Positions 110 through 34,455 of a stretch of 34,455 bases of DNA are shown here, piece after piece. Within the stretch, counting starts at the first letter, position 1. Every line of letters begins with the position of its first letter. The position numbers were made by a program, and so were the translations under genes. Under the pieces are notes generated by a model. The model worked only from the letters and a program-made list of their open reading frames with translations, was not told the DNA's origin and did no database searches. Source of the DNA: Lenisia limosa (lineage: Eukaryota > Protista > Breviatea); contig LPNZ01006643.1 of NCBI GenBank assembly GCA_001655205.1, forward strand, positions 1 to 34,455, read 5' to 3'.

Positions 110-3100
110 GAAAGACCGAGCTTATCACACACTGTGCTAAGGACCTCGGAATAGAACTTGTTGAATTTTCTCAGGCACCGTTCTACAGAGAACTGGGTTA
201 GCGAATACTGTCGGATATTTTTGGGCAATAGATCAAAATCGAAATTTACATATTATAGTATAGAAATACTATGTTCTGTGAAATTTGACTGAGTTTTGGA
301 TTTTGGTCATCTTTAAATATGAAGCACCAAAATGACAATAGCGGATAGTTTTTNNNNNNNNNNNNNNNNNNNNNNNNNNNNNNNNNNNNNNNNNNNNNNN
401 NNNNNNNNNNNNNNNNNNNNNNNNNNNNNNNNNNNNNNNNNNNNNNNNNNNNNNNNCTATGACTGATGATCCCTTTGTCGACAAGAGATCATACCTTGAT
501 GTACGTTTGGTTTCTATCATATGAGATACAGTTTTATAAGCAGTGTATTTTCTTATATTATTCTATACATCCACCATTCCACCCATATCGCTTCTACAAA
601 GATAATATTATAGTTTTTGAGTGACAAAGTTTACTCAAAATTTCCCTTATTTTTTTAGGATTTGGACGAGGGTCGAGCAAATGAGTTTGAAGAATTCCTT
701 ATTAAGTCATCATTCCCAACTCTGAAGCAGAAAACTGACACCAATAAACCAGGTACAGCAAAAGCTATCTTATTGTCTTTTAAATCATGGCATGGACAGC
801 TTCCGCCTCTGTCCAACAAAATATCAGTCTCATTTGTATCAATTCCTGTTTTTATGACATTGTAGACCACCCAGTCTTAATGAAGCGCTCAAGTGCCAAA
901 CGAAGCATCCCAACGTTCCAACTGCAGCCTCCTCAAAATGCCCCCGAGTTCAGCAGTCAAAACCCTCCATTAAGTCATGACCAGCAGTGGGGGCTAAGCT
1001 CTACCCAGTCCCAACAAAACACTCAGCAGACCCACCCCTGGATCCCCGGCTATCAAGATCCTCAACAAAACACTCCCCTCTCTCAATTTGAGATTTCTAT
1101 TTCTCCGTTTCAATCTTCACAAAGCAGCCAGATAAAGCAAGATCGCATCATTTCACGGTTTGTTGAAGAGTCATATAGTAATATCAACTTTAAATCATGA
1201 ATATTGGTCTGTTTTTTATTGAAATGAAAACACTTCCAATTTCAGGAGTTACTTTCAGGTTTGAGGTTCCTTCAAAAAAGAAAAAGAAGAAGTTCATCCC
1301 CACCCCTGTTGTCCCCCTGCCTGTTCCATGCAACGCCAGGTTTGCCTAAAATCCTTGAGAACTTGGCCTTTTATTGTATACAAAAGTTTGATTTACAGAG
1401 TTTCCCTAAGGTTCGAGTTAAAATTGTAATTCAATTCGAGATATTCGATCTTTTTATGACTGAAGGGATCGTATTGATACAGTAGAACTTCTTGTTATTT
1501 TCTGGTTATTATTTACTAAGACCTGATCTTTAGAGGCAACCATGTACCGGCCCCCATTCGCCACCAGTCTAGTGCCATGCATCCTCCCCCCTCAGTCGGT
1601 GGAAGAGCAATGAACTGTAGATCGAATACTGCCATTTCTTTTGAAATTAGATATTTATTCTCATGACAGCTCATGCCTTTTATCCGTTGCCCCCCTCTAT
1701 CTTTTTTGGCCAGCTTTTCCAGTCGCATTGCTTATCTTTTAGGATGCTTCATTCTTCGGTTCAATGCCTCAAGTCAATCCAAGAGGTCCACAGAATAGCT
1801 ATTCCAACCACCAGCAATACTCTCAGAATGCAAGCTCATTTGGCTTCTCAATTCATCGAGGCCCCTCCCAATTCCCCACTCAATCCCAACACTCACATGT
1901 TCCCACTCAATCAAACCCATATTCCCAATTCAATCAACCCCAGCCAGTCCAACAACTCCCTAAGCCTCATCACAGCGGTCCAATCAAACCCCCTTCAGCT
2001 CAATACCATAAACCTGAGGTACGTGGTGCACAGAGAGGGTATTTGGTTTTGAGGAAAACTGCGTTTCTAAAAATCTTAATTTTGCATTTTGACAGGGTAT
2101 CACAATGTTAGCTCTTTATACATGCCTATCATCTCATTGTTGCGCCTTAGCCTTGTACTTGAAATCCGTGTCATCAGACCGTAACATCTACCATTTGTTT
2201 ATTTTTTGTAGAACGCTAACTGTAAGAAGTTGGTTCTTATGGAGGATTTCATCGACTTTAAGCCAGCGTTTGGCTCCTCAAATCAGGCCCCTCCTTATGC
2301 AAGGGTATTTCTGATCTTTTATGATCTGATCTTTTAGATATTCTCAGGCGCTTTGAAGAAGGCTGGCGTGTGCAGTGGTATTGTGATTGTGACGGATAGA
2401 GAGTAGGTGGAGTGCGCTTTATCTAAACCTACCGCTACCGTACTATTTGTAGTCTGACAGGTGTCATTTTTTGAACTTCTTATTGTTTAGTTTTGTTTAC
2501 CGTTTACCTAGAGAGCTGAGAGATCGAAGTAAAGCGTTGCTTGTCAAGTGAGAAGGAACATATTTGTCATATTCTAGTTCTTGATGTCGCCAATAGTTTA
2601 TTTGTGATAACGTCTTAACAGAAATTATGTGAATGTACCCTTTTGTTTTTTGCTGACTATCACAGGATCAACCCAGTCACCCAAGCCGCGATGACCACTA
2701 AGCTTGTCAAGGTTCGAAATAAGGATTTTCTCGGTTTAGTTAGTATCATATATAAGTAACACTACAGATATGTAAAGATGAAAATCTCAAAGTGTCCAAA
2801 GACTTAATTAGAAGCGTCATCAGAGATGCCAAGTTTGTTGGAGTCTTTGAAAGTCTCACCTTTTTTGAAATTTGCAAAAAAAATTCCTAATTTATCTCAA
2901 CCATTTCCAACATTCTCCCCAACCATACACAACCATAAACACCCCCATATTCAGCCAGGACCTAAGATCAGCGATCAACAACTTGCAAGTCTATGCTGGG
3001 GTCTCTCCAAAGAGGCAGAAGGCGCCGAAGACGTTTTTTATTGATGTGCCGCAGGGTGTCCGAGATCAGCTTTATCATAAGTAGGTCTTCACCTGGTTCG

Positions 3101-5950
3101 AAAAAGACTGGTAACATATCGATATTTTTCAAGTTGGACACGAACGTTGTCCCACGTTCCATCTTTGATACCGTAATTTATTATTTGAAGAAATTAATTG
3201 ATAAACTTTTAAAATGAAGGGTCTACATGCGTTTTTGTTCAAAAAATCCTAATTCAATTTCAAAAAACATGTTTTTCTGTACTCTATCATCTATTTTCGT
3301 ACTTGACATTCCAATATTGCATTGAGCATTATTAAGCCTTGGTGATCTTCACTTACCCAATTAGGCAGCACAAGAAGATTGATCATAATGATCTATCGTA
3401 CAATCTCTTCCATGCTTGCTCGAAAGTGGTGTCCAATAAACGTTAGTCATATTGATGGTAACAATTACAGATAATTTATTTTGGGTTTTTCCGAACTAAT
3501 TATCCCCAAAGTATAAATTCGTAAATTCAGCTGGCCAATTTTTTTTTTTTTTTTTTTTTNNNNNNNNNNNNNNNNNNNNNNNNNNNNNNNNNNNNNNNNN
3601 NNNNNNNNNNNNNNNNNNNNNNNNNNNNNNNNNNNNNNNTCTAATTATTATTTCACATATCCCTTGAAAAGATGTAAGTGACTGAGGGAAATTGCCTTAA
3701 CTATCATCACATACACAAGTATACTATACTCTCACTACATGAAACATATGTGTGACATTCTTGCATATCATCTACATGTAGTGGTGTATTACATTCTTGC
3801 ATATCATCTACATGTAGTGGTGTATTACATTCTTGCATATCATCTACATGGTGGTGTAGTTTTATAACCCACATTTGAGTTTAATATCTAAGGTGGAGAA
3901 CATAGTACTGAGTCGCCCCTACCAAATGGACACCGAAGAGGAACACAATATCGAAGGTAGGCTTCGTGTTGCTTGTGTTTTATCCCCAAAACTCCTTTTG
4001 ATCTCATGGCACTTCACAAACCATCTCTTTTCATTGCGTTGAGTCGTCAGCCAATATTTTTCTTGGTCGATTCCGGACAGCATTTTGTCTCGATATATTT
4101 CATGAATCATTACTGTAATATGTACACAATTATATGATGCTCGTTTTGCTCTGAATAATGTGTTTGTAGGCCCTTCAGAGAGGAACCTGAAGATATATTT
4201 GCACAGTCTCATAGTGAGTTGTTTTTATGTGTTTTCAGTTTAAAATTACTATGCAACAACCATAGTAAACATGATTGTGTGGGCAATTTCATTCAGATCA
4301 CATCGTTCCTCGATTCCACATCTTGTTTTGGAAAGCCCAGAAACTAACCATTCACAGCGGACGCTCTCAATTTCTTGGATTATGTGGCCGAGAATATGTC
4401 ACTTTGGCACCAACACCCTTCCGACCTAACGTAGGCTTCCGAATAGACCCTAAGGGTTATTGGGTTTATGACAGAATTTTTTTATTCAAGATCCCCCTTT
4501 TAAGGGAGTAGTAAATCTTATACTTTGTCTTTTTAACTTCTGCCGCATTCCAATAACTCTTTTTAGATTTGCCTATGAACACATTCTCTTTGCTGAAAGA
4601 CTTCTTCATTTTGAGGTTGGGAACCTGTACTCTTTTCAACTTTTTCTGATTCAGCTCAGCCCGACAAAAAAATTCATTTTATCAGATTACACCTAATATT
4701 TTTGTTTATAATTAAAGCACTTACCATTTAGCATCGGGAGTATATGGCGGATATGGCTGTTTCTGTTGGCTTAAGAGGAGCCATGTTTGCTCCTGAGCAA
4801 GGCGCAGTCGCTATAACTAAGTTTGTTTAGTACAACTCAAAATTAATATTAATAAGTATCGGTATTATTCGTAGCTACTTTAGTACTGTGTCTGCTGTCT
4901 AAGACAGAATTTGAATCAATTGTCAAAAATCATCAGTTTATAAAAGAATATCAGCTTTGCTTGATTTTAGCGTCGGTGTTAGACTTTTCAAAACTGAATT
5001 GATTGAATTATGATATCCTCAGATTGCTCCAAACAAAGAAGCCAATAATGCGCGAAATCAAGGCGCAATCCCGCGCTCTACGGGACTCAGTAGATGCAGC
5101 TTTCCCCCCACGACCCCCTCTCTTCTCTGTATGCTATATCAGCTTCAAAGACTGTATACCTGTATCTAGGGCTTCCCTATGCTCCCAAAAAAGGACCGCT
5201 TGGCCATTCTTCGTCAGATTGTATGGAAGCCCCAATATAATGAGTAGTGTATTTATATAATACCCACATGCTTATATCATATACTATGTACATGTGACAG
5301 GTTGTGAAAGAAAGTACCAATGCCTATGAAGTTTTTCGAGGGAAGCACCATAATTCTCTGGTCTTACAAAACTACACAGGACAGCAGCCCACCCTACGGT
5401 GCTCTGTTTGAAAACGGCAAATGGATTGATGGGAGAGTTTGCCCTATTATTTCTGGCCCGGCCCGATTTAAGAACCTCCAGGACATGTCGTACCATTTGC
5501 CGCAGTCTAGTGGGGGGGGGGGCGATTCACTCAATCAGTCCGTTTGGCGATTCTTGTAATGCCGATTAGAAGGCTTCGTATCTTACCCTCAAATCCTATC
5601 CTATCCGTCAAATAGCGTACATTTATCTCTAGCAGAATTAACCCGTCTAGTGCCTGACGTGCAAAAGATAACTCTCGACCAACTTAACACGCACAACATT
5701 CGGCTTGATAAACTTGATGTACGTTTTGGCCTCTTCAACCTTGCTGTTGAACATCCTTTCTGCAAATGTTATCTGGGTATTCCCTCCACTTTGTCCCTTT
5801 TTGACTCTTTTTTTTTTCTCTATTCATATAATACAGCCTTGAATTACGTTTCAGGAAGAAGATGGGGACTTGGGGATGCTGGGTAAGTCAACCGATCGCA
5901 TCCAACGTCATGAGTTAATTCCCTATAACGCAGACCTAATTGAGGACTGA
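110..5950 (+). CDS. RAD17: Rad17/Rad24 checkpoint clamp loader large subunit (AAA+); multi-exon, 5' end lies outside the window
   Basis: Spliced exons reproduce Rad17 motifs in order: 110-196 Walker A GKTELITHCAKDLGIELVEF; 659-752 DLDEGRANEFEEFLIKSSFPTL (cf. human FKEFLLRATKYNKL); 2212-2304 KKLVLMEDF (Rad17-type Walker B, cf. KKIILVEDLP); ~2666-2712 KINPVTQAAMTTKLVK (cf. FNPVAPTIMMKFL); ~2955-3080 QDLRSAINNLQ (cf. GDIRSAINSLQ); ~3364-3441 DLSYNLFHACSKVVSNK (cf. LFLFRALGKILYCKR); ~4733-4819 HREYMADMAVSVGLRGAM (cf. LREYSTSIATRGVM); acidic tail EEDGDLGML|DLIED* ending TGA 5948-5950. Most joins checked are phase-compatible GT-AG; a few middle exons are uncertain. Confidence 0.9.
3756..3860. repeat. 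36-bp tandem minisatellite, ~2.9 copies, in a RAD17 intron
   Basis: Unit CATTCTTGCATATCATCTACATGTAGTGGTGTATTA starts at 3756, 3792 and 3828 (third copy degenerate at its end); head-to-tail with no spacers. Confidence 0.9.
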
Positions 5951-6421
5951 AACGTCCCTCAGTTTCTTCTGACAGGAGATTTCAAGAGGTCGCCGCAAAA
6001 ATGCCCAATCCTTATTGTTCTTGTTGCTGAGTTTAGCACGTGCTAGGGCTTGATGAAATTCATGAGTTTTGAACACTGGCAACCTGTCAACGTGTGAACA
6101 CAATGTGAACAACAAACAAATATTACTATCGGCTCTACATAATCGAAACCCCATAATTCAAATTATATTATTATATGAGGAGAGTAGAAGAAAGTAGTTC
6201 CCCGTTCGCCGGCGGGTCTAACTCCGACTTCACCTTTCATAACGGAACCAGAGAAGAGGACCCGTCGGCGGATCGGGAAGAAAGAGACGTGTTGAAGCAG
6301 AAATTCAAAGATCCTCCGTCATCAAGCGTCGTACAAGCCACAAGCCCGCAACCCTTCCTCTGCTCCAATAATAACAACTAAATTCCTACATTCCCACTAA
6401 TATACAGGACCATTGAAGGCA

Positions 6422-9400
6422 ATGCCGTACCGAATGATCATTCTCTTGGCCACATATCTTCTTCTTCACTTTGTCGCCTCGGCACTGTAGGTCGGGCCTC
6501 ACTGAGTATCGAGTGAGTATCATTTGTCCAGAGAGTTATCTATTTCCACTTTGGTGTAGATATGATGCCCTTTGTCTTTTTAAATAAGCTGTTTCCCAAG
6601 CTCAATCTCAATAACATGTCGATCTTTACCCACCTTTCCTGTTCTCATTTTCAGAGTTCTGGATGCAAAGAATGGACTAGAAGCCTCATTTGATGGTTGG
6701 TGCAGACTTTCAAAATCATTTGTTTCCTGGTATTTTTCTTTGTCATTGTATTTTTTTTTATCTATGTCCATCACCATCAATCTTCTTCTTCTCGCTCCCT
6801 CTAGATTTTTATCTTTTTGATATATTTTTTTTTCGGTGGGTTGCCTCTCAGTTCTCATCAATATTGATTTGATTTGGGATTTTTTTGTTTNNNNNNNNNN
6901 NNNNNNNNNNNNNNNNNNNNNNNNNNNNNNNNNNNNNNNNNNNNNNNNNNNNNNNNNNNNNNNNNNNNNNNNNNNNNNNNNNNNNNNNNNNNNNNNNNNN
7001 NNNNNNNNNTCTGTAGATGAGCTTATTGCCCTGATCCAGCAATATGGGGTAGGTGGGAACATTAATATTAGGGAATGTTGGTTGTACTTCAAATGAATGC
7101 TTACGACTGTACATATTTGATTACGTAGGGAGAATGCTTATGACTGTACATATTTGATTACGCAGGGAGAATTACCTTATTTGACGATGCAGGAATCAAC
7201 ATTCCGAAGCAGTGTTATGAGCACCACCACAACGTTCCTCGGTTCCCTTCCTGGTTGGGTGGTATTATCTCTTAAGACAAACAATTGGGTGATTGAATAG
7301 TATCAGATTATCACATGTATTAATGACTTCAGCCTTTCTCGTTGAATTTTTCATTTCGGCATCTAATACCAAATAGATAAGAAAAGGTGACTGTAATCCT
7401 TATTTAATCTGGTTGATATTAATACAATATCAGCCTGCTCCAAATCCTTTGTTCTGTCTTCACCATTTCCATGCAAATCTGCAAACAAGCTTCCTCACCC
7501 CACAGCTACATGGACCTCAGTCATGTCACTGACAGTTCCAATGACCGTGTATTCCAAGGTCATAGTTCGAGCCGAGATCTGTGCTGTGGTACGCAGATAA
7601 ATTGTAGCAAAAATGAAACAAGTAATGGTTATATGTACGTAATAATACGATGTGAAAAATAGAAATTACAATGTCAACCTATATTATCAAACCATTATTC
7701 CATACATTGTCTTTGTTTGAAGTAGTATTTTCTTTTTTTTGAAGACAGATATTGTTCTATCTTTTTAGCTATCTATTTGACCATTTGGTGCCACGTACTC
7801 AACAGTTAAGTGACAGTTTAGATTACTGGTGCGAACCTAATGCAATGTCGCTTCAATGATGGTAGGCTATCCTTAGGGTGTCACACCGTATATAACCTTA
7901 GAGGGGATAGAAGACAAGCCAATAAAGCTGCTTCTTGCAAAATGCACAAAATTCACGAACTAGTTTCTTTACTGTGAAAAGCCACGTTTTCTTTTTACCA
8001 GCCATAGACCTCCATCATCGAATTGTCGGACGGCCAAAAGCAGATGGTTTGTGATTGGGACATTAAAGCCGTTGTAAAATATAGTTATGTTGATATCAAT
8101 ACTGTTTAACCTTTGTTCAATTGTCTCTTTTCATTGTTGAATTAGGTTCTTAAAGCCCAGTTTTCTCCATTCTAGGTGATTATCGTTTCATCCAGAACAC
8201 AAATCAGTAACACAGCAGGGCTCATATGTCTTCCAATGACAACGTTCCTCGAGGGCTCTTCCGATATTATAGTCGACGTAAGCGGTAGTGAAGACAATGA
8301 GGGCTTCAATTAGTTCCCAAATAAGACATATTAATCCTAGACAACTCTTGATATTTTTCATCCTCTCTCGCCTGGTCAAAATACCAGCTTTTTCAAGGCA
8401 GCCTTGAAGATTCAATGGATTATATGCCTGTATCGTAACTCCCCAGATTAACTGCCAAGCCGCAGCTGGTGTTACGTTTGTCGGTGAATATTTAGGGAAG
8501 ACTATTGTCAATACTCTCTCTACGGGTAGGCCTGGAGAACAGAATCTTTGAAATGGTGGTGTCCCCCAGTAACCTCTCTGCATCCTAAGAATGGTATTTT
8601 TTTAATTGACATTTATAGCTACCATTCGTGGAGGATTTGATTCAACGGTTGCGGTCGGAATCACGGAAACTGTCACGTCGAACGCTCCCCAGACTAGTGA
8701 GCTCTTCTTCACTCGCACATACCTTGTGCTTTCCTCGGAAGAAGATTCAACTTTTGTGACAGATAGCCCTTTATTTTTTTGCTTTTCAAAAAAAACAACT
8801 GCAAATCTAGGCACCATTAATGCCACAGATTCAGCAGTTTTCAGTGCCGTTCCAAATTGGAATACTTCCATCACCGCTTCCGAGCCATCCATCGCCCTTT
8901 CCATCATGGACATTAGCACGCAAGTGTCCGGGTCAAATTGGTTCAACCCTGTTACTACTCTCACTGGTAAGGGGCAGACATTGATCATACAATTGAAGAA
9001 TTATCATATTCAATTGAAAACCAGAGTTTTTTTCTGAAGGTAGTCAGGGTTGGAGAGAAATCCTGCTTTAGCTTCAGATATCAACTATAAATTGCGACTT
9101 ATTAACTGAGCACATTTAACCAGTCAGGTCAACTAATCTAGTTGTCAATATCTCTTGTTTACTTATCATTTTTTTTGCTCATGGTGAAGTCATATTAATG
9201 TGTAAGGTGACACCAGAACAGTCCATGGAAGCCATTGGCAATTCGCTGTCAACTACGCAATCAGCCCAGTTCGGGTATCTGAGGTGTCCCCTGGTACGCG
9301 TGGGATGGGTCAATGGAAATATTGTTTTTGATATTATTTTATAAGTAATATATCTATTGTTTTTTATGAGCGAGGACATTATTGGAAGAAAACGGACATT

Positions 9401-26200: not shown

Positions 26201-27723
26201 TCAATCACAAATAACCCATTAGTGGCGATACTGTTCCCGAAGTGAATCGACCCACCATGCTTCTTGGTAAAGACCTTGAAGATGTAGAGGTCAACATCGG
26301 GTGCAGGACCAGGGCATGTCAATGACTGGCTTGCAATAGACTATCGTCAGAAAAATAGTTTTTTGCAGTGTAATATGAGCCATAATCAGATAATGAGCAA
26401 TAGTTACATCAACACAATAATTACTGATTTCAAAGAGTATTCTTTGCATAAGAAAAAACCTGGAGCTTCATACACGTTTCCAAAATCATGTCTAATAGTG
26501 ACATTTATTTGAACCGAAAGTGAGGCTCTCAAAAAACCCATTGCCCACTCCAGCAACAAATGTACCATGTCCAACGTTGTCATTCATTCCCTCTTCTGAC
26601 GTCCAATTGGTGATCTCCTAGAGGTTTGAAACATTAAATAATAAATGATGACTTTTTAATTATCAAATCAATTCGTATAATAAAATACTGCTGCCCAACA
26701 CCCAATAAATGCAGCAAAATAAGAAGCATAATGTCATTATAGCCCTCCATATCAGATATAACGACTAACTTTTACATTTCGAAAGTGAGGGTGATTCTCC
26801 TGAAGCCCAGTGTCAAAAATCGCCACTTTGACACCTTTGCCTAAGCAATGGTCAATTCTAGAACAATCTGACCTTCGATTAAGTAGCTGTCCAACCCCCA
26901 CATCATACCTGTAATTCCTCTCTCCCATAAATGTGAGACTTTAAGAAATGCCGCTGATGTTTGCCCTAATGTTGTGAAAAACGAACAACAGGAACACCCC
27001 TCCTCTTCTTTGTTTTTTCACCAACCTTCTGAGGATAAAAGAGTTCTTTGGATTGGAGAAGGGCTGAGAGGTAAAACATGACTTTTACTTTAAACGCAGA
27101 ATAAAGTAACCCTACATACTCTATATCTTGCGGACTTGTTCTCAGAGCTTCATCTTCAAATATCCTCTTGACAAATTTTAAAGATTTGAGCTCCCTGAAA
27201 AGTAAAGGCTCGTTATTTTATGAACCGAAAGTTATAAGGGAAAGAGAGGATGTGATGTACAATACACTATTTTATAAGTTTGCACAATATAGTATACACG
27301 TAGAAAGCTATGTGTAGAGTTCTAAGGCAAATGGTGTGGACGGCCTCTGCCAGCTGTAAACATTCATTTCCAAACCTGAAACACGCATCTTCGTCACCGC
27401 TGTCAACCTGAGGAGATAATCAGAATCATAACATCGAATATTCCTCCAGAACTTCATTTGATTGATGTAAAAACTCTCAAGATTTCATGAAAAATCCAAC
27501 AACACCAAGCTACCGTGAATTTGAGATAGTCACTTGGAGCTTTCCTGGCAACCAATCGATGCGGTAACAGAACCAGGGAAGAACATGAAGGCGGTATGTC
27601 GAATTGCTCAAGGCTTTTGACTGGTTCGCGTTGTGTGAACTGCAAGATATGGACAGTGGGCTGATGCAAGCCAAAGGTAAAGGCAGTACATAGTAGTACA
27701 AAGGCAGGAATGCACCCTTTCAT
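20216..27723 (-). CDS. MBTPS1: Membrane-bound subtilisin-like site-1 protease (SKI-1/S1P, peptidase S8) homologue; complete, multi-exon
   Basis: Signal peptide [18 protein letters not shown] (ATG 27723). Catalytic Asp [22 protein letters not shown] (26840-26776); His [11 protein letters not shown] (~26561-26569); [13 protein letters not shown]...NLSIGGPDF; oxyanion Asn [12 protein letters not shown]|[15 protein letters not shown]; [21 protein letters not shown]; Ser [10 protein letters not shown]|VAG (~25027-25035). C-terminal S1P blocks [13 protein letters not shown]...[26 protein letters not shown]...[20 protein letters not shown]...[40 protein letters not shown]|[13 protein letters not shown] then a basic tail, TAA 20218-20216. 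All blocks are colinear with human S1P as recalled. Confidence 0.95.
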
Positions 27724-28124
27724 TTTCAATTACTAATTACTCGCTTGTGTTTCCAACGCTATTTCATTCAAAGAAAACACTAGGCGCTCATCTCACAAAT
27801 GATGTCTATCATCATCTCTCACATGTAGGAGAGGCAGGGGTGGCAACGAATAACGAAGTGGACTGAGTGGAGGGCCTTTTCTTTGTTGTTCCTTCTTCCT
27901 TCTCATTCCAGGGTGATGAGGGGTTTACTGCTTGAGTAGCGGTTTGCAAGCACGGGGTGGGTGTGGGTGGTATATAAAATAAGACATGGGGTTACTCTGA
28001 ATGATCTATCACATGGGTGGTGAGTTGAAGGTTACTTACGATCAGTAAGAGCATTGATGAACCCAATAATAGGGCTTGAATAGGGCTTAGGAAGGTTTTT
28101 AGGCTTTTGTGAGCACCTATCGCA
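27724..28124. promoter_or_regulatory. Putative bidirectional promoter region between head-to-head MBTPS1 and dCache-PDE genes
   Basis: 401 bp between two divergent ATGs (27723 on -, 28125 on +); contains TATATAAAA near 27971 and several GGGTGG motifs. Positional inference only. Confidence 0.35.
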
Positions 28125-31100
28125 ATGCGGGGCGGAAAGCAATATCCTATTCAACCTTTTGAAACAGAAACACCATCAGGACATGCCCTACTGAAGCATC
28201 CGCGCAGTGCTAGGACAACAGGGTCAGCTGTGAGCGGAAGGAGCTCTCGCCGCGGAAGCTATGCTAGTTCTCTTGGGAAGTTTTCAATTCGGAAATCAGC
28301 AGGCGGAAGCACGAATTCGATTCAGGTTTGGAAAAAGGGCGAAGCCGTTTTATGTTTTCAGAGCTTCGTATCTGTATATTCCTCGCAATATCAGCTTCCT
28401 GACTGCCCAATCCAGCCTCCTGCAGGGTTTCAATCCAAATCAACATGGAATGTGAGGAGGATTTTCCATAATAATAATCGCTTTAGACAATAATTCAGCT
28501 TACGGTGGCCTTCTTTATTCCTGCTATGTTCCTTTTATCGGCTACATTCTTCGCTTTGTACGAGAGAGAGCTCGATGGTTCACACACCGCTTTGGAGATC
28601 ATTGAATTGGAACACCTTTCGGTAGGCCTGGTAGTCTGATCCGAATATATCTTTATTGAATTAGTACATACACACTGCGGGGGCTTGTTTTTGAAAAGGG
28701 GAGATATTTTACCTTGAAGCATGAACTGTCATTTTTTATTCCCACTGACAACGCCTCATTCTCTTGTTTATACCTAGTTTTCATTGTTAGGTATGTGTTA
28801 GGGTGATTATAAAACATACACTAACAGATAGATCCTATATTTGAACATAATTAATCTTTTGTGAGCACACTTTCTACCTTTCCACTATTTGTGGTCAGTG
28901 TTGGCAAAAGACAGTGCAGAGCACAGGCAGTAGCTGCCAGATTGATTTCAGCCCCCCTCATTATAATGAGTTTAGATGTTATTGCTGTCATCCTGCTTTC
29001 ATCATATTGTACAACTCTCCGTTTTTCCACTTACGGATAAATAAACATTTAACGGAGTTATTTTCCGAACCACCTTTTCATTCACGTATGTTTTTGATGA
29101 GTTTATCGGATCTCCCCGAAAAAGAACGAAATAGTCTGTACTCCCTGTACTCATGTGATCTGTCATGTTTTGGTCCGTAAATAATCGATAATAGCAGGTC
29201 TCATACTCTATCCCTTTTTCTTTTTCCTCAATTCCGAACCCCATGTAGCATTTGATATTTGACGCTATTCAGCAAGTTCAAGCTGTACAAGTCAACCGCC
29301 TCATCAACCTGCCGCCTGATATGAACTTCCTTGACGCTGCTGTTCTGAGGGAGTACAAGGCTGACAACGGAACCACTTTCCAAACGGTGAGTTCTACAAG
29401 ATGTCAAAAGAGCCTTGTCATTTCAGGAATTCGTTTTTAAAAAGGGACAAATGGGTATTAGTATGTCATAATTCAGAACATAGCTTATTAGTAGAGCTCC
29501 GGGCAATTAGTATTAATAAAATATTAATATTATTAATACATATCAGACCGTCCACTATCTGTGAAAACAAGCCAAATGAACATTTTCCTTGATAGAANNN
29601 NNNNNNNNNNNNNNNNNNNNNNNNNNNNNNNNNNNNNNNNNNNTCTCGCCAATAAAAATGTTGTCATCAACAAAAAAAAGTTATTGTCATTTTTGTTAGC
29701 AACAAGAGTGTTACAACAATTCTCTTAGTTATATGCCATATTTTTAGCAAAATTTTTCGTATATTTCAAAAAATTCACAGATAGAGGAAAATTCACAGAT
29801 ATAATATGGACGTTGTGATATCATATTTTAATATCAAAGTATTAATTTTCCAACATTATACATTATAAAAGGAGTATTAATAAATATAAATACTGAAGAA
29901 GCAGTATTAACAAATCAGAAAACAGAAGAACAAAACAATCAACGGAATGAAACCCATTTTTTAACAACATTGTTCTTGCATAATCAACGAACATCCCCAC
30001 TCCCCCTGAGTTATTGACCTTTTGTCTTTGTTAATTTTGTGTCTTCTATTCACCACCACCACCACAGACTGACGACATTCCGACGGCGATCTCATTGATC
30101 GAACTGACTTTCAAAGACTTTGGTTCAGCCAGACCGAAATTCAACCAGGTACTGCGGAGTCATATGTGGTCAGCCCATTGAGAAAGCTAAGTAACCCTTT
30201 CGTTGAACTGTAAATTGTGAGGTGATCTTTTTATAACCGTATTGACCCCCCCCCCNNNNNNNNNNNNNNNNNNNNNNNNNNNNNNNNNNNNNNNNNNNNN
30301 NNNNNNNNNNNNNNNNNNNNNNNNNNNNNNNNNNNNNNNNNNNNNNNNACAAATGGCGAATCCATAATTGTAAGAGGGATACCGATTCTTGGAGGCTGTT
30401 CTTTTGATTATCTTTTGTTATTACAGGGTTGATTCGATTTTGTTCTTTCAACATTACAAATACTGTATTTNNNNNNNNNNNNNNNNNNNNNNNNNNNNNN
30501 NNNNNNNNNNNNNNNNNNNNNNNNNNNNNNNNNNNNNNNNNNNNNNNNNNNNNNNNNNNNNNNNNNNNNNNNNNNNNNNNNNNNNNNNNNNNNNNNNNNN
30601 ATGTTATAATCCAAGAAATGTAAGTGTTAAATAAAACTAATGACCGTGTATTGGACTTGGTCTTTTATCTCTTATCAACATTATTTTGCATTCGCCTTCT
30701 TCTATGACTTGGTAGTGGAGAACTGTACTTCTCGCGCCTAGACCTCAACATTGAGAACGGCGCGGTCGAAGTGCCTTATCGCCCAATGCTGCGCTACGGC
30801 CAACACTTCTACAGTGCCGACAAAGACACTCATGGTGTTGTTCTCATTAACTACGCTGGTGAGTGGCCTTATTGTATGTTATCAAATGAGAGATAATAAA
30901 GGGAAAGCAGTCAATGCTGTCATCATATTTATCCGAGATAACCTCGTTTGTCTTACAATTCCGTGACCGGTATTATATGTTTCTTTAGTGGGTGTTTTTT
31001 GAATATAATATAATAGCTATACTATTATATTATATAGCTATATGATAGTATGATATACTACATGTTATATACTATTATGTATATGTATATACTATGTAAT

Positions 31101-34100
31101 ATATATGTATAATCAAATATTATTTGATATTTTTTTGGGTGAAAGATTGCCAAGATTTCACAACTCAGCCGAAGATATGTTGACATCCCTAAGAGCTTTG
31201 GGTTCATCTGATTCCCAGGTATTCCTGATTGACTACTATGGGTGGGCGGTTGTTGGCTTGGACTGTATTTGAGATATGATTAAATTGAATGTAACTTATT
31301 TCACGTATTTTAGTCTACTTTTTTCAAGATTTGAGAACACAAATGACACTTTCACGTCCGTGTGACCTTCTAACCGCCTCCAGCTACTTCATCATGTCGT
31401 CAAGTGCTCCTGATGATGACTGGGGATGGATGCTGGGTAACGACACCGTTAATATGAAGCTACGCCACCCCCATGCTTGGACTTCTATCTCTAAGATGAT
31501 TGAGAACAAGGAGATCGATGGTTCGTTGACCTAATGCCTGACCTCGCTTCGCTCCTTTTGGGTATCCACGGCATCATGCACAAAATTTAAAAACAATTGT
31601 GATTTTTTAGGGCAAGTACATCTCGACGACGGACTATACACTTTCAAAATTAGCGCTCCTCAGTATATTTCCTGCCACTCTTCCACTGTTGATGCAACCA
31701 ATTCAACCCACCCATGCAAAGCTATTGTGAGAGGGCACTTCACTTGGTATTAAAGAAGCATTGGTTATTTTTGGATGTTATCGAGGCAGATCATGAACTA
31801 TTTTTTTTATCCTTTTTCCTTCTCATTCCTCTAGTATGATCTTGACCACAACAACATTTGGATTATGGTGACGTTTGTACCGAAGAGCTCTTATGATGAT
31901 GAAGCCATTTTCAATAGCAACTTCACTACCTGGTTTGTTGGCGCATTCAGGCTGACAACAATACTGTATTTCTGTCGTTTTACTTTTTATCGGAATGCAG
32001 ATCCTTTTTTTACCCGATCGGTCACACCTCAGGATTATTTCGTCCCTCTTGCTGTTGTTTGTTGCCATTCTCGCGGCCTACCTCATCATGCGTTCAGTTG
32101 TTGACGAGAGGTGGAAGAAATATGACAAGAACGTCTTGCTCTACCAGGTAGGTGTTCCCTCCCCTGACGTAATGGAGTCAATATTCCAAGCAATATACAC
32201 CCTCCTACTTGTGTAGGGCAGAGTTCATATCATTACGGCAATTTACTCGCTTCCATTGTTCCTCCCCTCGCTCCCAAAGTTCAATTTTGTATATATTTTG
32301 TACTCTGGCTGTCGCTTTATTTAGAGCGACAATACATTAAACACTAAAGGCTGAAACAATGCTCCGGCGCTTCCTTGAGGAGAAGAAGCGGACCAAAACC
32401 CTGCAGAAGCGTATTGACGACATTACATCAGGAAAGGTCTGTAGAGTCTTGGATTTAGAAATACTCTGTATCAAAAGGAAAGGATATCATATACTTGCGA
32501 AAAGACAATAGTCAGAACATATATGATATTAATATATCATACACATATAGTATAATATATGTACATATTATATCTACAAAACCCAGGGCTTCCTTCCAAA
32601 CAAATACCATCTTCTGAAAGCAATTCCTCACGCTTCAGGTCAATGGAATGTCTGTTTCTTCGCCTTTTGAGTCAGCCATGAAACTCTTAAAGACTGTAGG
32701 GTGGGGTTCTACTACAGCTTTGAGTCATAACGCGCTACACGGCTTCGGCCCAATATTGTGTGTATTTTTGTTTTGAATTGCGTGATGGCATGGTAGGACT
32801 ATTCAACCTGGAGGTATCTAGAATTTTCCGTTTGAGTTTCATAAATTTCAAATTCTCACTCATTTTGGTTTTTTTCTGTTTTAGAAATCATCTCTTTACC
32901 AGTGATGGGATGCGGTGCTGNNNNNNNNNNNNNNNNNNNNNNNNNNNNNNNNNNNNNNNNNNNNNNNNNNNNNNNNNNNNNNNNNNNNNNNNNNNNNNNN
33001 NNNNNNNNNNNNNNNNNNNNNNNNNNNNNNNNNNNNNNNNNNNNNNNNNNNNNNNNNNNNNNNNNNNNNNNNNNNNNNNNNNNNNNNCGATATTTTGGCC
33101 GCTAACTCCCGAGAGCTCTTCCGACCTGATATGGAGAAACAGGTGGGTGGGACCTTCAGCTGAGAGAAAAAAATTGAAAACCTCTTTTCATCATTATTCT
33201 GGCATGAATCAACTAAAATTATTTATTGCACACTATTCTCTTGAACAATCATACGCTGGGTGTAGAGAATCGAAGTAAATGATTGCGATGTTGGCAGTAA
33301 CGATGATGTAGTGACATTCTCTCCTCCCAGGGGTGATTTGGGGGGGGGGGGGGTTTANNNNNNNNNNNNNNNNNNNNNNNNNNNNNNNNNNNNNNNNNNN
33401 NNNNNNNNNNNNNNNNNNNNNNNNNNNNNNNNNNNNNNNNNNNNNNNNNNNNNNNNNNNNNATGAGGAGACGGAAGCATGGTTGTTCTACGAGCTTGCTA
33501 AAAAGAAGGACAGCAGCCAGACCCGGGTGGCAAGTGCTCAGCAAACTACAACAAGTGACACGCCTCTTTCAGGCGCCATGTCTATTGCTGTTCCCTGTAG
33601 GGGGGGGGGTGCCATGATATTTGTGGGGCATGAAGCACCCTCAGTTCTCAGCTCTCTATACTTTTGTCAGCAAAACCGTTGTGATGATCCGTGGTTCACC
33701 TTACAGCCATGAATGTGCCCAAAACAAGAATGTCGCCCTTCGAGGCAATGTTGTCCAGCCTTCCGCAGAACTATATTCCAGATATCAGAAAGTAGGTCTT
33801 CTTTATTCTTTTTTTTTTTCATATTGTCCCATTTCACGCTATCTCTCTCCCGACTTATAATGTAGACACCTTTCAGCCCCTTCAGCCTTGGTTATGGACA
33901 CAAAGTCCTTGGCCCAATCATGTGGCGGAACTCCCCTTATTGTTGCGGCGATGCATGTCATGGAAAAGCACAGCATCTTCCAAAAGGTGTGTGGGGCTGA
34001 TATGCTATCTATATTGGATTATCAAGTCAAGACCCTCTGCTAATATTCAAAAATGCAAAATTCAAGTCTCCATCCAAATTGGCCAATTTGTACCAATGTC

Positions 34101-34455
34101 CATCACATTTCATTCTTCCCGGATGTGCAAATGCAATAATCTATTATGCTTATCACACTGATCTTTTTACAGTATTCAATTTTTGGTCATTTTGACAGGT
34201 GTTGACTATTATCATATCCACTCGTAGATAGTTGAGTTTTCAATGATACTCTGACACTTGTTTGATTTGTTTTAAAATCACATCACCAGGTGAGTTTGGA
34301 CGTGGAGGTGTTCAGACGCTTTGTCTCCGCAATCGAATCAGGATACGTCACCTCCAATGACTACCACAATAAGTTAGGTTATTCACATTAAAATACTTGT
34401 GATGCCATTGATATGATGTTGTTTGGATCATAATCACCAATTGCTACCCCCCCCC
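28125..34455 (+). CDS. Putative two-TM receptor phosphodiesterase: extracellular dCache-like sensor plus cytoplasmic class I 3',5'-cyclic nucleotide PDE; 3' end lies outside the window
   Basis: Ser/Arg/Gly-rich N-terminal exon from ATG 28125; TM1 exon 28499-28621 LTVAFFIPAMFLLSATFFALY; ectodomain exons incl. 30716-30858 GELYFSRLDLNIENGAVEVPYRPMLRYGQHFY...GVVLINYAG, 31384-31520 APDDDWGWMLG...RHPHAWTSI, 31611-31726 GQVHLDDGLYTF, 31835-31932 WIMVTFVPK; TM2 exon 32033-32147 IISSLLLLFVAILAAYLIM; coiled coil 32350-32436; PDE-associated SPFESAMKLLK, SRELFRPD, EAWLFYE; catalytic-domain start 33866-33986 VMDTKSLAQSCGGTPLIVAAMHVMEKHSIF and 34290-34372 VSLDVEVFRRFVSAIESGYVTSNDYHN (class I PDE YHN motif). 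Joins from 31384 onward are phase-compatible wherever no gap intervenes. Confidence 0.85.
29273..31932 (+). other. Exons of a bacterial-type double-Cache (dCache_1-like) extracellular sensor domain
   Basis: LPPDMNFLDAAVLREY, FKDFGSARPKFNQ, NGESI, DLNIENG...P...R, GVVLINYAG, VFLIDYYG, WGWML...YP/HP..W..I, GLYTF and W.MVTFVP follow the motif order I recall from periplasmic dCache domains of bacterial sensor kinases and diguanylate cyclases; bounded by TM1 and TM2. Confidence 0.75.
33866..34372 (+). other. N-terminal part of a class I cyclic-nucleotide phosphodiesterase catalytic domain
   Basis: D..SLAQSCGGTPL (cf. FDIFEL...GRPL) and F.RFVSAIESGY..NDYHN (cf. NFLRAIE.GY..NPYHN). The metal-binding H...HD...D residues would lie beyond the window end and are not seen. 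Confidence 0.85.

What the first reader, a model, noticed from the sequence alone, without database searches (positions are those of the whole stretch)
28125..34455. Candidate ligand-gated 'receptor phosphodiesterase': bacterial dCache sensor fused through TM and coiled coil to a class I cyclic-nucleotide PDE
Seen: one spliced reading frame with topology cytoplasmic N-tail - TM1 - ~300-aa ectodomain - TM2 - coiled coil - PDE-like region ending in GY..NDYHN. Established: TM-dCache-TM is the sensing module of bacterial chemoreceptors, histidine kinases and diguanylate cyclases; regulatory inputs of characterised class I PDEs are GAF, PAS, receiver (Dictyostelium RegA), calmodulin-binding or rhodopsin (choanoflagellate RhoPDE) modules. 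Inference: this is a single-chain surface receptor that converts extracellular small-molecule binding directly into cAMP/cGMP hydrolysis, the degradative mirror of receptor guanylyl cyclases. I recall no characterised protein with this architecture but could not search.
Basis: partly seen in the sequence, partly recalled or inferred. Interest (0 to 1): 0.88.

Follow-up and report, generated by a model that had tools for sequence, protein, structure and literature searches.

The report
Bacterial-type sensor fused to cyclic-nucleotide phosphodiesterase
An expressed, intron-rich protist gene joins an outward-facing sensor domain of a kind otherwise seen here only in bacterial signalling proteins, through a membrane helix, to the start of an enzyme that destroys cAMP/cGMP, which suggests a surface receptor that signals by degrading the second messenger rather than making it.

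Summary
PolyA-RNA contigs confirm 16 of the splice junctions. They run in one open frame across the two assembly gaps that lie between the sensor and the PDE. One 925-nt contig links the end of the TM2 exon to the PDE exons.

The product so far is about 734 aa: a basic N-tail, TM1, a roughly 323-aa acidic ectodomain that carries all four glycosylation sequons, TM2, a roughly 184-aa linker, then the start of a class I PDE.

The ectodomain is a clear member of the bacterial double-PDC (dCache-type) sensor family Pfam PF21623. It scores 156-164 bits against profiles I built from bacterial members. Those members match PF21623 and the solved Vibrio structure 3LID. It is not dCache_1 (PF02743) in the strict sense.

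A 37-aa peptide spanning the window's end hit only class I PDEs in the PDB (53 of 53). The rest of the catalytic domain lies beyond the window, so activity is unknown. The coiled coil is not supported.

None of the 120 best bacterial relatives carries a PDE, and no paper describing this fusion was found. First-stage notes of this scan report several similar receptor-type PDE genes elsewhere in the same genome; those notes are unchecked.

Ligand gating is inferred, not shown.

The parts
28125..28451 (+). First coding exon(s): the start codon and a basic, Ser/Arg-rich cytoplasmic N-tail. It contains an optional in-frame 36-nt intron at 28326-28361.
   Evidence: An in-frame stop lies at 28110-28112. 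RNA contigs cover 28078-28325 and 28333-28451. A spliced form joins 28325 to 28362 through loose letters that are unique at 28362.
28452..28486 (+). A tiny 35-nt GT..AG intron.
   Evidence: The RNA joint 28451|28487.
28487..28621 (+). Exon encoding TM1 (residues about 114-134) and the start of the long N-terminal helix of the sensor.
   Evidence: An RNA contig covers 28487-28572. There is a hydropathy peak of 2.07. The donor at 28622 is inferred.
29249..29386 (+). Sensor exon (N-terminal helical part).
   Evidence: An RNA contig covers 29294-29386 and joins to 30068. The acceptor at 29248 is inferred.
30068..30148 (+). Sensor exon.
   Evidence: RNA joints 29386|30068 and about 30148|hidden exon.
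30349..30369 (+). Visible 3' end of a 69-nt exon. Its first 48 nt are hidden in gap 30256-30348.
   Evidence: RNA contig arithmetic and a loose end behind 30369. A DNA contig gives 51 real letters for the gap.
30601..30619 (+). Inferred visible tail of an exon otherwise hidden in gap 30471-30600. RNA shows at least 52 nt of that exon.
   Evidence: Loose RNA letters follow 30369. There is a GTAAGT donor at 30620 and the frame fits exon 30716. RNA does not cover this tail.
30716..30858 (+). Sensor exon carrying the family's most conserved motif (S.LDLNIENG..E.P.RPM.R).
   Evidence: RNA joint 30858|31169. This piece retrieved the bacterial relatives at 44-49% identity.
31169..31241 (+). Sensor exon.
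   Evidence: RNA joints 30858|31169 and 31241|31384.
31384..31520 (+). Sensor exon (conserved WG.M, P..W).
   Evidence: RNA joints 31241|31384 and 31520|31611.
31611..31726 (+). Sensor exon (membrane-proximal module).
   Evidence: RNA joints 31520|31611 and 31726|31835.
31835..31932 (+). Sensor exon (last strand, conserved W).
   Evidence: RNA joints 31726|31835 and 31932|32033.
32033..32147 (+). Exon encoding TM2 (residues 458-476) and the start of the basic cytoplasmic linker.
   Evidence: An RNA contig reaches 83 nt into it. Its last 12-14 nt head the 925-nt PDE contig. The hydropathy peak is 2.75.
32350..32436 (+). Linker exon (charged, probably helical).
   Evidence: RNA contig with joint 32436|32639.
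32639..32696 (+). Linker exon.
   Evidence: The RNA contig runs on into 40 letters hidden in gap 32921-33087.
33088..33142 (+). Visible 3' part of a linker exon. Its first 40 nt are hidden in gap 32921-33087.
   Evidence: The RNA contig bridges the gap and the frame is open.
33462..33596 (+). Visible part of a linker exon. Its first 25 nt are hidden in gap 33358-33461. It encodes a Ser/Thr-rich stretch.
   Evidence: RNA and DNA contigs bridge the gap; the DNA contig shows ..CCTTCCAG just before the exon.
33707..33791 (+). Exon upstream of the PDE core.
   Evidence: RNA joints 33596|33707 and 33791|33866.
33866..33986 (+). Exon for the N-terminal helices of the PDE catalytic domain.
   Evidence: RNA joint 33986|34290.
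34290..34372 (+). PDE exon ending in ..NDYHN. The mRNA continues beyond the window with N-C-H-A-A-D-V.
   Evidence: The RNA contig carries 222 letters beyond 34372, of which 30 are shown. The 37-aa peptide hits only class I PDEs.

Best explanation
This is one expressed eukaryotic gene, probably of the breviate protist that earlier notes of this scan name for this assembly. It encodes a type of receptor phosphodiesterase.

Shown:
- One spliced frame gives a cytoplasmic N-tail, TM1, a roughly 323-aa extracytoplasmic domain, TM2, a roughly 184-aa linker and the start of a class I cAMP/cGMP phosphodiesterase catalytic domain.
- The extracytoplasmic domain is a bona fide member of the bacterial double-PDC (dCache-type) sensor family PF21623. 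In bacteria this domain sits in front of histidine kinases, diguanylate cyclases, EAL domains, class III nucleotide cyclases and SpoIIE phosphatases.
- The gene keeps about half of the family's most conserved residues, including the S.LDLNIENG..E.P.RPM.R motif.

Inferred:
- As in its bacterial relatives, a small molecule or ion binds the membrane-distal pocket of a dimeric sensor.
- The resulting shift of TM2 and the helical linker changes the activity of the dimeric PDE on the cytoplasmic side. An outside cue would then lower or raise cAMP/cGMP directly.

The ligand, the sign of regulation, the substrate and the integrity of the remaining catalytic residues are unknown.
For: - Splice joints, and RNA bridging of the gaps in one open frame.
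- Two TM peaks. Positive-inside charge pattern and 4 of 4 glycosylation sequons in the ectodomain.
- Exon 30716-30858 retrieved 15 metagenome loci with uninterrupted ORFs.
- The spliced model matches those ORFs at 68-95 bits over residues about 105-511.
- It scores 163.6 bits (E 3e-52) against an HMM built from 12 of them and 156 bits against an HMM of 128 family members.
- In 40 of 82 highly conserved columns the model has the consensus residue; 11 more are hidden in assembly gaps.
- The bacterial ORFs match PF21623 at 59-116 bits over the same region (one cut ORF below the cut-off), and their output domains are HK or GGDEF.
- One bacterial homologue matches PDB 3LID/2P7J at E 4e-19. That structure is a double-PDC sensor (PMC8534201) and is listed under dCache_1 in PMC4822843.
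- The PDE peptide gave 53 of 53 PDB hits to class I PDEs, all aligned at the start of the catalytic domain. The best hit is PDE7A at E 0.0012. The YHN and HAADV histidines are present.
Against: - The catalytic domain beyond HAADV is not in the window, and only 30 of the 222 further RNA letters could be read. The HD..H..N metal site is therefore untested.
- First-stage notes report paralogues in this genome with dead PDE domains (unchecked).
- No ligand is known for this sensor subfamily; phosphate in 3LID is a crystal ligand (PMC8534201).
- The TM2 exon and the PDE contig are joined by only 14 nt of RNA.
- The RNA evidence consists of assembled contigs from one study, not reads.
- The Pfam models themselves could not be run on the spliced protein.
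- The linker shows no clear heptad pattern.
Confidence: 0.6

Rival explanations
1. It is a receptor with a catalytically dead PDE domain. The same sensor and membrane architecture would be present, but the PDE-like module would bind cyclic nucleotide or partners without hydrolysing it, acting as a scaffold or cNMP sensor.
For: First-stage notes list several receptor-like pseudo-phosphodiesterases with replaced metal ligands in the same genome (unchecked). The downstream catalytic motifs of this gene were not seen.
Against: Both catalytic-site histidines visible so far (YHN and HAADV) are intact, and the peptide aligns well with active PDE7, PDE8, PDE1 and PDE4.
Confidence: 0.2
2. It is a membrane-anchored PDE that is constitutively active. 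The ectodomain would serve for localisation, adhesion or dimerisation only, and would not gate the enzyme.
For: No ligand is known. The linker has no recognisable HAMP or S-helix domain and only a weak heptad signal.
Against: The sensor keeps the family's most conserved residues. In every bacterial relative examined the domain precedes a signalling output.
Confidence: 0.12
3. It is an artefact: either two neighbouring genes (a sensor protein and a PDE) or a scaffold mis-join that was read as one gene.
For: DNA does not bridge gap 32921-33087. The RNA link from TM2 to the next exon rests on 14 nt of one assembled contig.
Against: One 925-nt RNA contig spans that gap and the next one in an open frame. 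All 19 or more exons lie on one strand in phase, with no stop. No RNA ends were reported between them.
Confidence: 0.04

Closest known systems
Bacterial PF21623 (HK_sensor_dom_bact) double-PDC sensors, e.g. Vibrio parahaemolyticus VP0354, PDB 3LID/3LIE/2P7J
   Same: The sensor domain is homologous, is flanked by two TM helices and shares the conserved motif residues. It scores 156-164 bits against family profiles.
   Different: The bacterial proteins signal through histidine kinase, GGDEF/EAL, class III cyclase or SpoIIE outputs. This gene is eukaryotic, is split by many spliceosomal introns, and its output is a class I cAMP/cGMP PDE.
Rhodopsin phosphodiesterase (Rh-PDE) of choanoflagellates
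   Same: It is a single-chain membrane receptor joined by a linker to a cytoplasmic class I PDE (10.1101/2020.04.14.040642, abstract). It is the characterised example of a receptor PDE that I know of.
   Different: Its input is light through an N-terminal rhodopsin domain. Here the input module is an extracytoplasmic chemosensor domain between two TM helices.
Bacterial dCache-GGDEF/EAL enzymes and PF21623-class III cyclase fusions (e.g. P0183, P0188 and P0194)
   Same: The logic is the same: a periplasmic dCache-type sensor controls second-messenger turnover across the membrane.
   Different: The enzymes differ (c-di-GMP turnover, or cNMP synthesis). None of the 120 best relatives carries PF00233.
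Receptor guanylyl cyclases of animals and the CHASE-domain adenylyl cyclase G of Dictyostelium
   Same: An extracellular sensor, a membrane span and a cytoplasmic cyclic-nucleotide enzyme lie in one chain. ACG is named as a CHASE-domain enzyme in PMC5447177.
   Different: Those enzymes make cNMP, whereas this one would degrade it. The sensor families also differ.
Eukaryotic dCache_1 proteins (calcium-channel alpha2delta, CACHD1)
   Same: They carry a Cache-superfamily ectodomain in a eukaryote.
   Different: PMC8915833 states that all eukaryotic dCache_1 proteins it found carry a VWA insertion. This sensor aligns collinearly with bacterial ones without such an insertion and is fused to an enzyme.

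Membership tests
PF21623 HK_sensor_dom_bact (double-PDC / dCache-type sensor) | Significant, collinear sequence match to the family profile over the whole domain | tested here: met
   The Pfam HMM itself could not be run on the spliced protein, because that protein has no reference. I therefore used HMMs built locally from bacterial ORFs; ten of these were checked against Pfam and nine pass the PF21623 cut-off, and the 120 added for the larger HMM carry precomputed PF21623 annotations. The model scores 163.6 bits (E 3e-52) and 156 bits against them, with HMM positions 8-388 aligned to model residues 105-511.
PF21623 HK_sensor_dom_bact (double-PDC / dCache-type sensor) | Extracytoplasmic position between two TM helices | tested here: met
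   Hydropathy peaks at residues 114-132 and 458-476. The charge pattern and the glycosylation sequons place the domain outside. This rests on prediction only.
PF21623 HK_sensor_dom_bact (double-PDC / dCache-type sensor) | Family-conserved residues (LQ.K..RYYF, S.LDLNIENG..E.P.KPM.R, G..LNY, WGFM, P..W, GQ, W) | tested here: met
   Of 82 columns with at least 75% conservation, 40 are identical in the model, 11 are hidden in assembly gaps, and many of the rest are conservative changes.
PF21623 HK_sensor_dom_bact (double-PDC / dCache-type sensor) | Double PDC fold | not testable with these tools
   The fold is inferred only. Homologue L131 matches the solved double-PDC structure 3LID at E 4e-19. 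The spliced protein could not be handed to the structure predictor.
PF02743 dCache_1 in the strict sense | A match to the dCache_1 profile above its cut-off | tested here: not met
   The bacterial relatives reach only 21-32 bits against a cut-off of 45. Local HMM and hhalign profiles of Pfam-verified dCache_1 sensors give no signal with the model. The 2016 classification did place 3LID in dCache_1 (PMC4822843).
Class I cyclic-nucleotide phosphodiesterase (PF00233 PDEase_I) | N-terminal catalytic-domain helices ending in YHN..HA.DV (the acid histidine and the first metal histidine) | tested here: met
   The 37-aa peptide gave 53 of 53 PDB hits at E up to 1, all class I PDEs and all aligned at chain positions about 50-130. 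The best hit is PDE7A at E 0.0012. The functional roles assigned to these two histidines come from my own knowledge.
Class I cyclic-nucleotide phosphodiesterase (PF00233 PDEase_I) | The HD..H..N metal-binding signature and the rest of the roughly 240-aa catalytic core | not testable with these tools
   This part lies beyond the window's end at 34455. The RNA contig has 222 more letters there, but only 30 are shown.
Ligand-gated receptor enzyme (functional class) | Ligand binding to the ectodomain changes catalytic activity | not testable with these tools
   This needs biochemistry. It is inferred only from the behaviour of bacterial relatives.

The most novel reading that the evidence does not exclude
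This protist carries a family of chemoreceptor phosphodiesterases: bacterial periplasmic sensor modules (PF21623 dCache-type here; Cache-like and BMP-like in other genes, according to unchecked notes of this scan) wired through a TM helix to class I PDE domains. These proteins would convert extracellular ligand binding directly into cAMP/cGMP breakdown. Such a class of eukaryotic surface receptor has not been described, and it would be the chemical counterpart of rhodopsin-PDE.
Probability: 0.45. Interest if true: 0.85.

Novelty: new variant of a known kind. Interest (0 to 1): 0.72.

Why it matters
The characterised class I PDEs that I know of are controlled from inside the cell (by GAF, PAS, receiver or calmodulin inputs) or by light (Rh-PDE). 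A PDE driven by an extracellular chemosensor would add a new input route to cyclic-nucleotide signalling.

It would also show that a bacterial periplasmic sensor can be re-wired to a eukaryotic enzyme after gene transfer. It would be an exception to the reported rule that eukaryotic dCache domains carry a VWA insertion. And it would offer a template for chemically gated tools that lower cAMP/cGMP.

It also gives a handle on the still unknown ligand of a large bacterial sensor family, which had at least 721 members in one search.

Tried and rejected
Tried without result:
- Single exons against Pfam, against the PDB and in the ESM Atlas gave nothing, because the pieces are too short.
- The one whole-library phmmer job, run with the 40-aa PDE exon, returned only spurious hits to repetitive proteins (HYR, NB-ARC and Arm repeats). 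Neither this gene nor a close relative of that exon is in that library.
- I fetched 120 chemoreceptor loci by a conserved MCP motif and confirmed dCache_1 sensors among them by Pfam. I then gathered 120 PctA-like dCache_1 proteins and built profiles from them. None detects the ectodomain. This shows that the domain is not close to that branch.
- A tblastn of the model against the rest of the window found no paralogue.

Rejected:
- A coiled coil stated as fact.
- Two separate genes.

Full report
**What is in the sequence.** The region is eukaryotic DNA of about 40% G+C, with many GT..AG introns. I built an exon model from ATG 28125, which is preceded by an in-frame stop at 28110-28112, to the window's end. 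The model gives about 734 residues:
- a basic Ser/Arg-rich N-tail (residues 1-113);
- a hydrophobic helix at 114-134;
- an acidic domain of about 323 residues;
- a second hydrophobic helix at 458-476;
- a charged and then Ser/Thr-rich linker of about 184 residues;
- about 74 residues that end in ..GYVTSNDYHN at the window's edge.

**Gaps and splicing (the test asked for first).** One public polyA metatranscriptome run (X1) and one DNA-like run (X2) from the same study hold this stretch. Their contigs were laid on the window in two calls.

- RNA contigs show 16 joints. Wherever both ends of the skipped stretch are readable they are GT..AG. They include two tiny introns of 36 and 35 nt in the N-tail. 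The 36-nt intron is in frame and is also seen unspliced.
- Gap 29598-29643 lies inside an intron that the RNA skips.
- Gaps 30256-30348, 30471-30600 and 33358-33461 are bridged by DNA contigs. Their true lengths are 51, 89 and 40 nt, and each hides part of an exon.
- Gap 32921-33087 is bridged only by RNA.
- A single 925-nt RNA contig starts with the last 12-14 nt of the TM2 exon, a string that is unique in the window. It runs through both later gaps and all linker and PDE exons in one open frame, then continues 222 nt beyond the window. The letters shown there read N-C-H-A-A-D-V-V-F-M.
- Only the joint 28621|29249 and the short exon tail 30601-30619 are inferred.

The single reading frame is nevertheless real.

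**Topology.** The 15 residues before TM1 and after TM2 are net positive. Those after TM1 and before TM2 are net negative. All four N-x-S/T sequons of the protein lie in the middle domain. This fits a topology with the N-terminus inside, the sensor outside and the PDE inside. It is a prediction, not a measurement.

**The ectodomain.** Single exons found nothing in Pfam, the PDB or the ESM Atlas. Profiles that I built from Pfam-verified dCache_1 chemoreceptor sensors did not detect the domain either.

The decisive step was a scan of metagenome contigs with the stop-free stretch around exon 30716-30858.
- It returned 15 loci with uninterrupted, bacterial-type ORFs of up to about 1200 aa.
- My spliced model matches these ORFs at 68-95 bits over residues about 105-511, that is, TM1, sensor and TM2 in collinear order.
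- It scores 163.6 bits (E 3e-52) against an HMM built from 12 of them.
- It scores 156 bits against an HMM of 128 family members.
- Pfam assigns the matched region of the bacterial proteins to PF21623, "Bacterial histidine kinase, sensor domain", at 59-116 bits in nine of the ten tested. There are only sub-threshold matches to dCache_1. The domain is followed by PAS, HAMP, HisKA/HATPase_c or GGDEF.
- One homologue matches the solved sensor domain of Vibrio parahaemolyticus VP0354 (PDB 3LID, 3LIE, 2P7J) at E 4e-19. This is a double-PDC structure with phosphate in the crystal (PMC8534201; PMC8694187), and Upadhyay et al. filed it under dCache_1 in 2016 (PMC4822843).
- Of 82 columns conserved in at least 75% of the family, the protist protein has the consensus residue in 40, and 11 more fall in the assembly gaps. 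The striking motif S.LDLNIENG..E.P.(K/R)PM.R is kept, as are WG.M, P..W and the terminal W.

The family should be named PF21623 rather than PF02743.

**The PDE.** The Pfam PDEase_I model begins at the YHN motif (my own knowledge), so almost none of it is inside the window. A 37-residue peptide made of the last exon plus the ten residues read from the RNA was searched against the PDB. All 53 hits with E up to 1 are class I cyclic-nucleotide PDEs (PDE7A, 8A, 1B, 4D, 3B, 4B and parasite PDEs). All align at the same place near the start of the catalytic domain. The best E-value is 0.0012. The histidines of YHN and HAADV are present. The HD..H..N metal site and the rest of the core could not be seen, so activity is open.

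**The linker.** The roughly 45 residues after TM2 are charged and probably helical. The best heptad register has only 47% hydrophobic a/d positions, against a background of 35%. The coiled coil is therefore not supported as stated. There is no room for a GAF or PAS domain.

**How it most likely works.** Shown: the architecture, the expression and the family memberships above. Inferred: the sensor dimer binds a small ligand in its membrane-distal pocket, as its bacterial relatives are thought to do. TM2 and the following helix then transmit the change to the dimeric PDE, so that the outside signal sets the rate of cAMP/cGMP hydrolysis inside the cell. The main rival is a catalytically dead PDE module. 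A constitutive anchored PDE and an assembly or transcript artefact are less likely.

**Comparison and novelty.** A search seeded with a bacterial homologue's sensor found 721 proteins. The best 120 all carry PF21623. Their outputs are histidine kinase, GGDEF, EAL, class III cyclase (PF00211) or SpoIIE, and none is PF00233. Full-text searches found no paper that combines Cache/dCache/CHASE with a class I PDE. The nearest characterised receptor PDE that I know of is rhodopsin-PDE. Gumerov et al. report that every eukaryotic dCache_1 protein they found has a VWA insertion (PMC8915833); this one has none. I could not query a domain-architecture database, and the protein libraries searched do not contain this gene, so uncharacterised database entries with the same architecture cannot be excluded.

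**Within this scan.** First-stage notes list eight other phosphodiesterase notes on other pieces of the same assembly, seven of them receptor-like, some called pseudo-enzymes. They are unchecked. If they hold, this gene is one member of an expanded family rather than a one-off. Other notes assign the assembly to the breviate Lenisia limosa and describe tiny introns. I saw two tiny introns here, both ending in AG, but I did not verify the organism.

**Verdict.** This is a new domain combination of known modules, and its regulation and activity remain to be shown.

Noticed in passing
window 29456-29855: DNA contig depth in run X2 jumps from about 30 to 3,000-8,500 in the AT-rich intron around gap 29598-29643, with several variant letters. 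This looks like a very high-copy repeat or satellite, and it probably caused the gap.
   Followed up: no
window 28326-28361 and 28452-28486: Two tiny GT..AG introns of 36 and 35 nt sit beside introns of 74-681 nt in the same gene. The 36-nt intron is in frame, and RNA contigs show it both spliced and retained, so the N-tail may come in two forms that differ by 12 residues.
   Followed up: partly
window 27700-27913: A separate RNA contig (291 nt, depth 8) covers this stretch upstream of the start codon and ends at 27913. It could be a 5' UTR exon of this gene or the end of a neighbouring gene.
   Followed up: no
window 30246-30255, 33333-33357, 34447-34455: Homopolymer runs of C or G border the assembly gaps and the window's end. 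The stated gap lengths (93, 130 and 104) overestimate the real ones (51, 89 and 40 nt).
   Followed up: partly
loci L121-L134 and proteins P0124-P0243: The bacterial PF21623 sensors share near-invariant residues (LQ.K..RYYF, SPLDLNIENG..E.P.KPM.R, WGFM). This is unusually strong conservation for a ligand-binding domain and suggests one common, still unidentified ligand. Several members are fused to class III nucleotide cyclases (P0183, P0184, P0188, P0194, P0216, P0229).
   Followed up: partly
loci L002, L015, L022, L101, L103: Five of the 20 chemoreceptors scanned whole against Pfam have periplasmic domains of 250-290 aa with no Pfam match at all. These are unclassified sensor domains.
   Followed up: no
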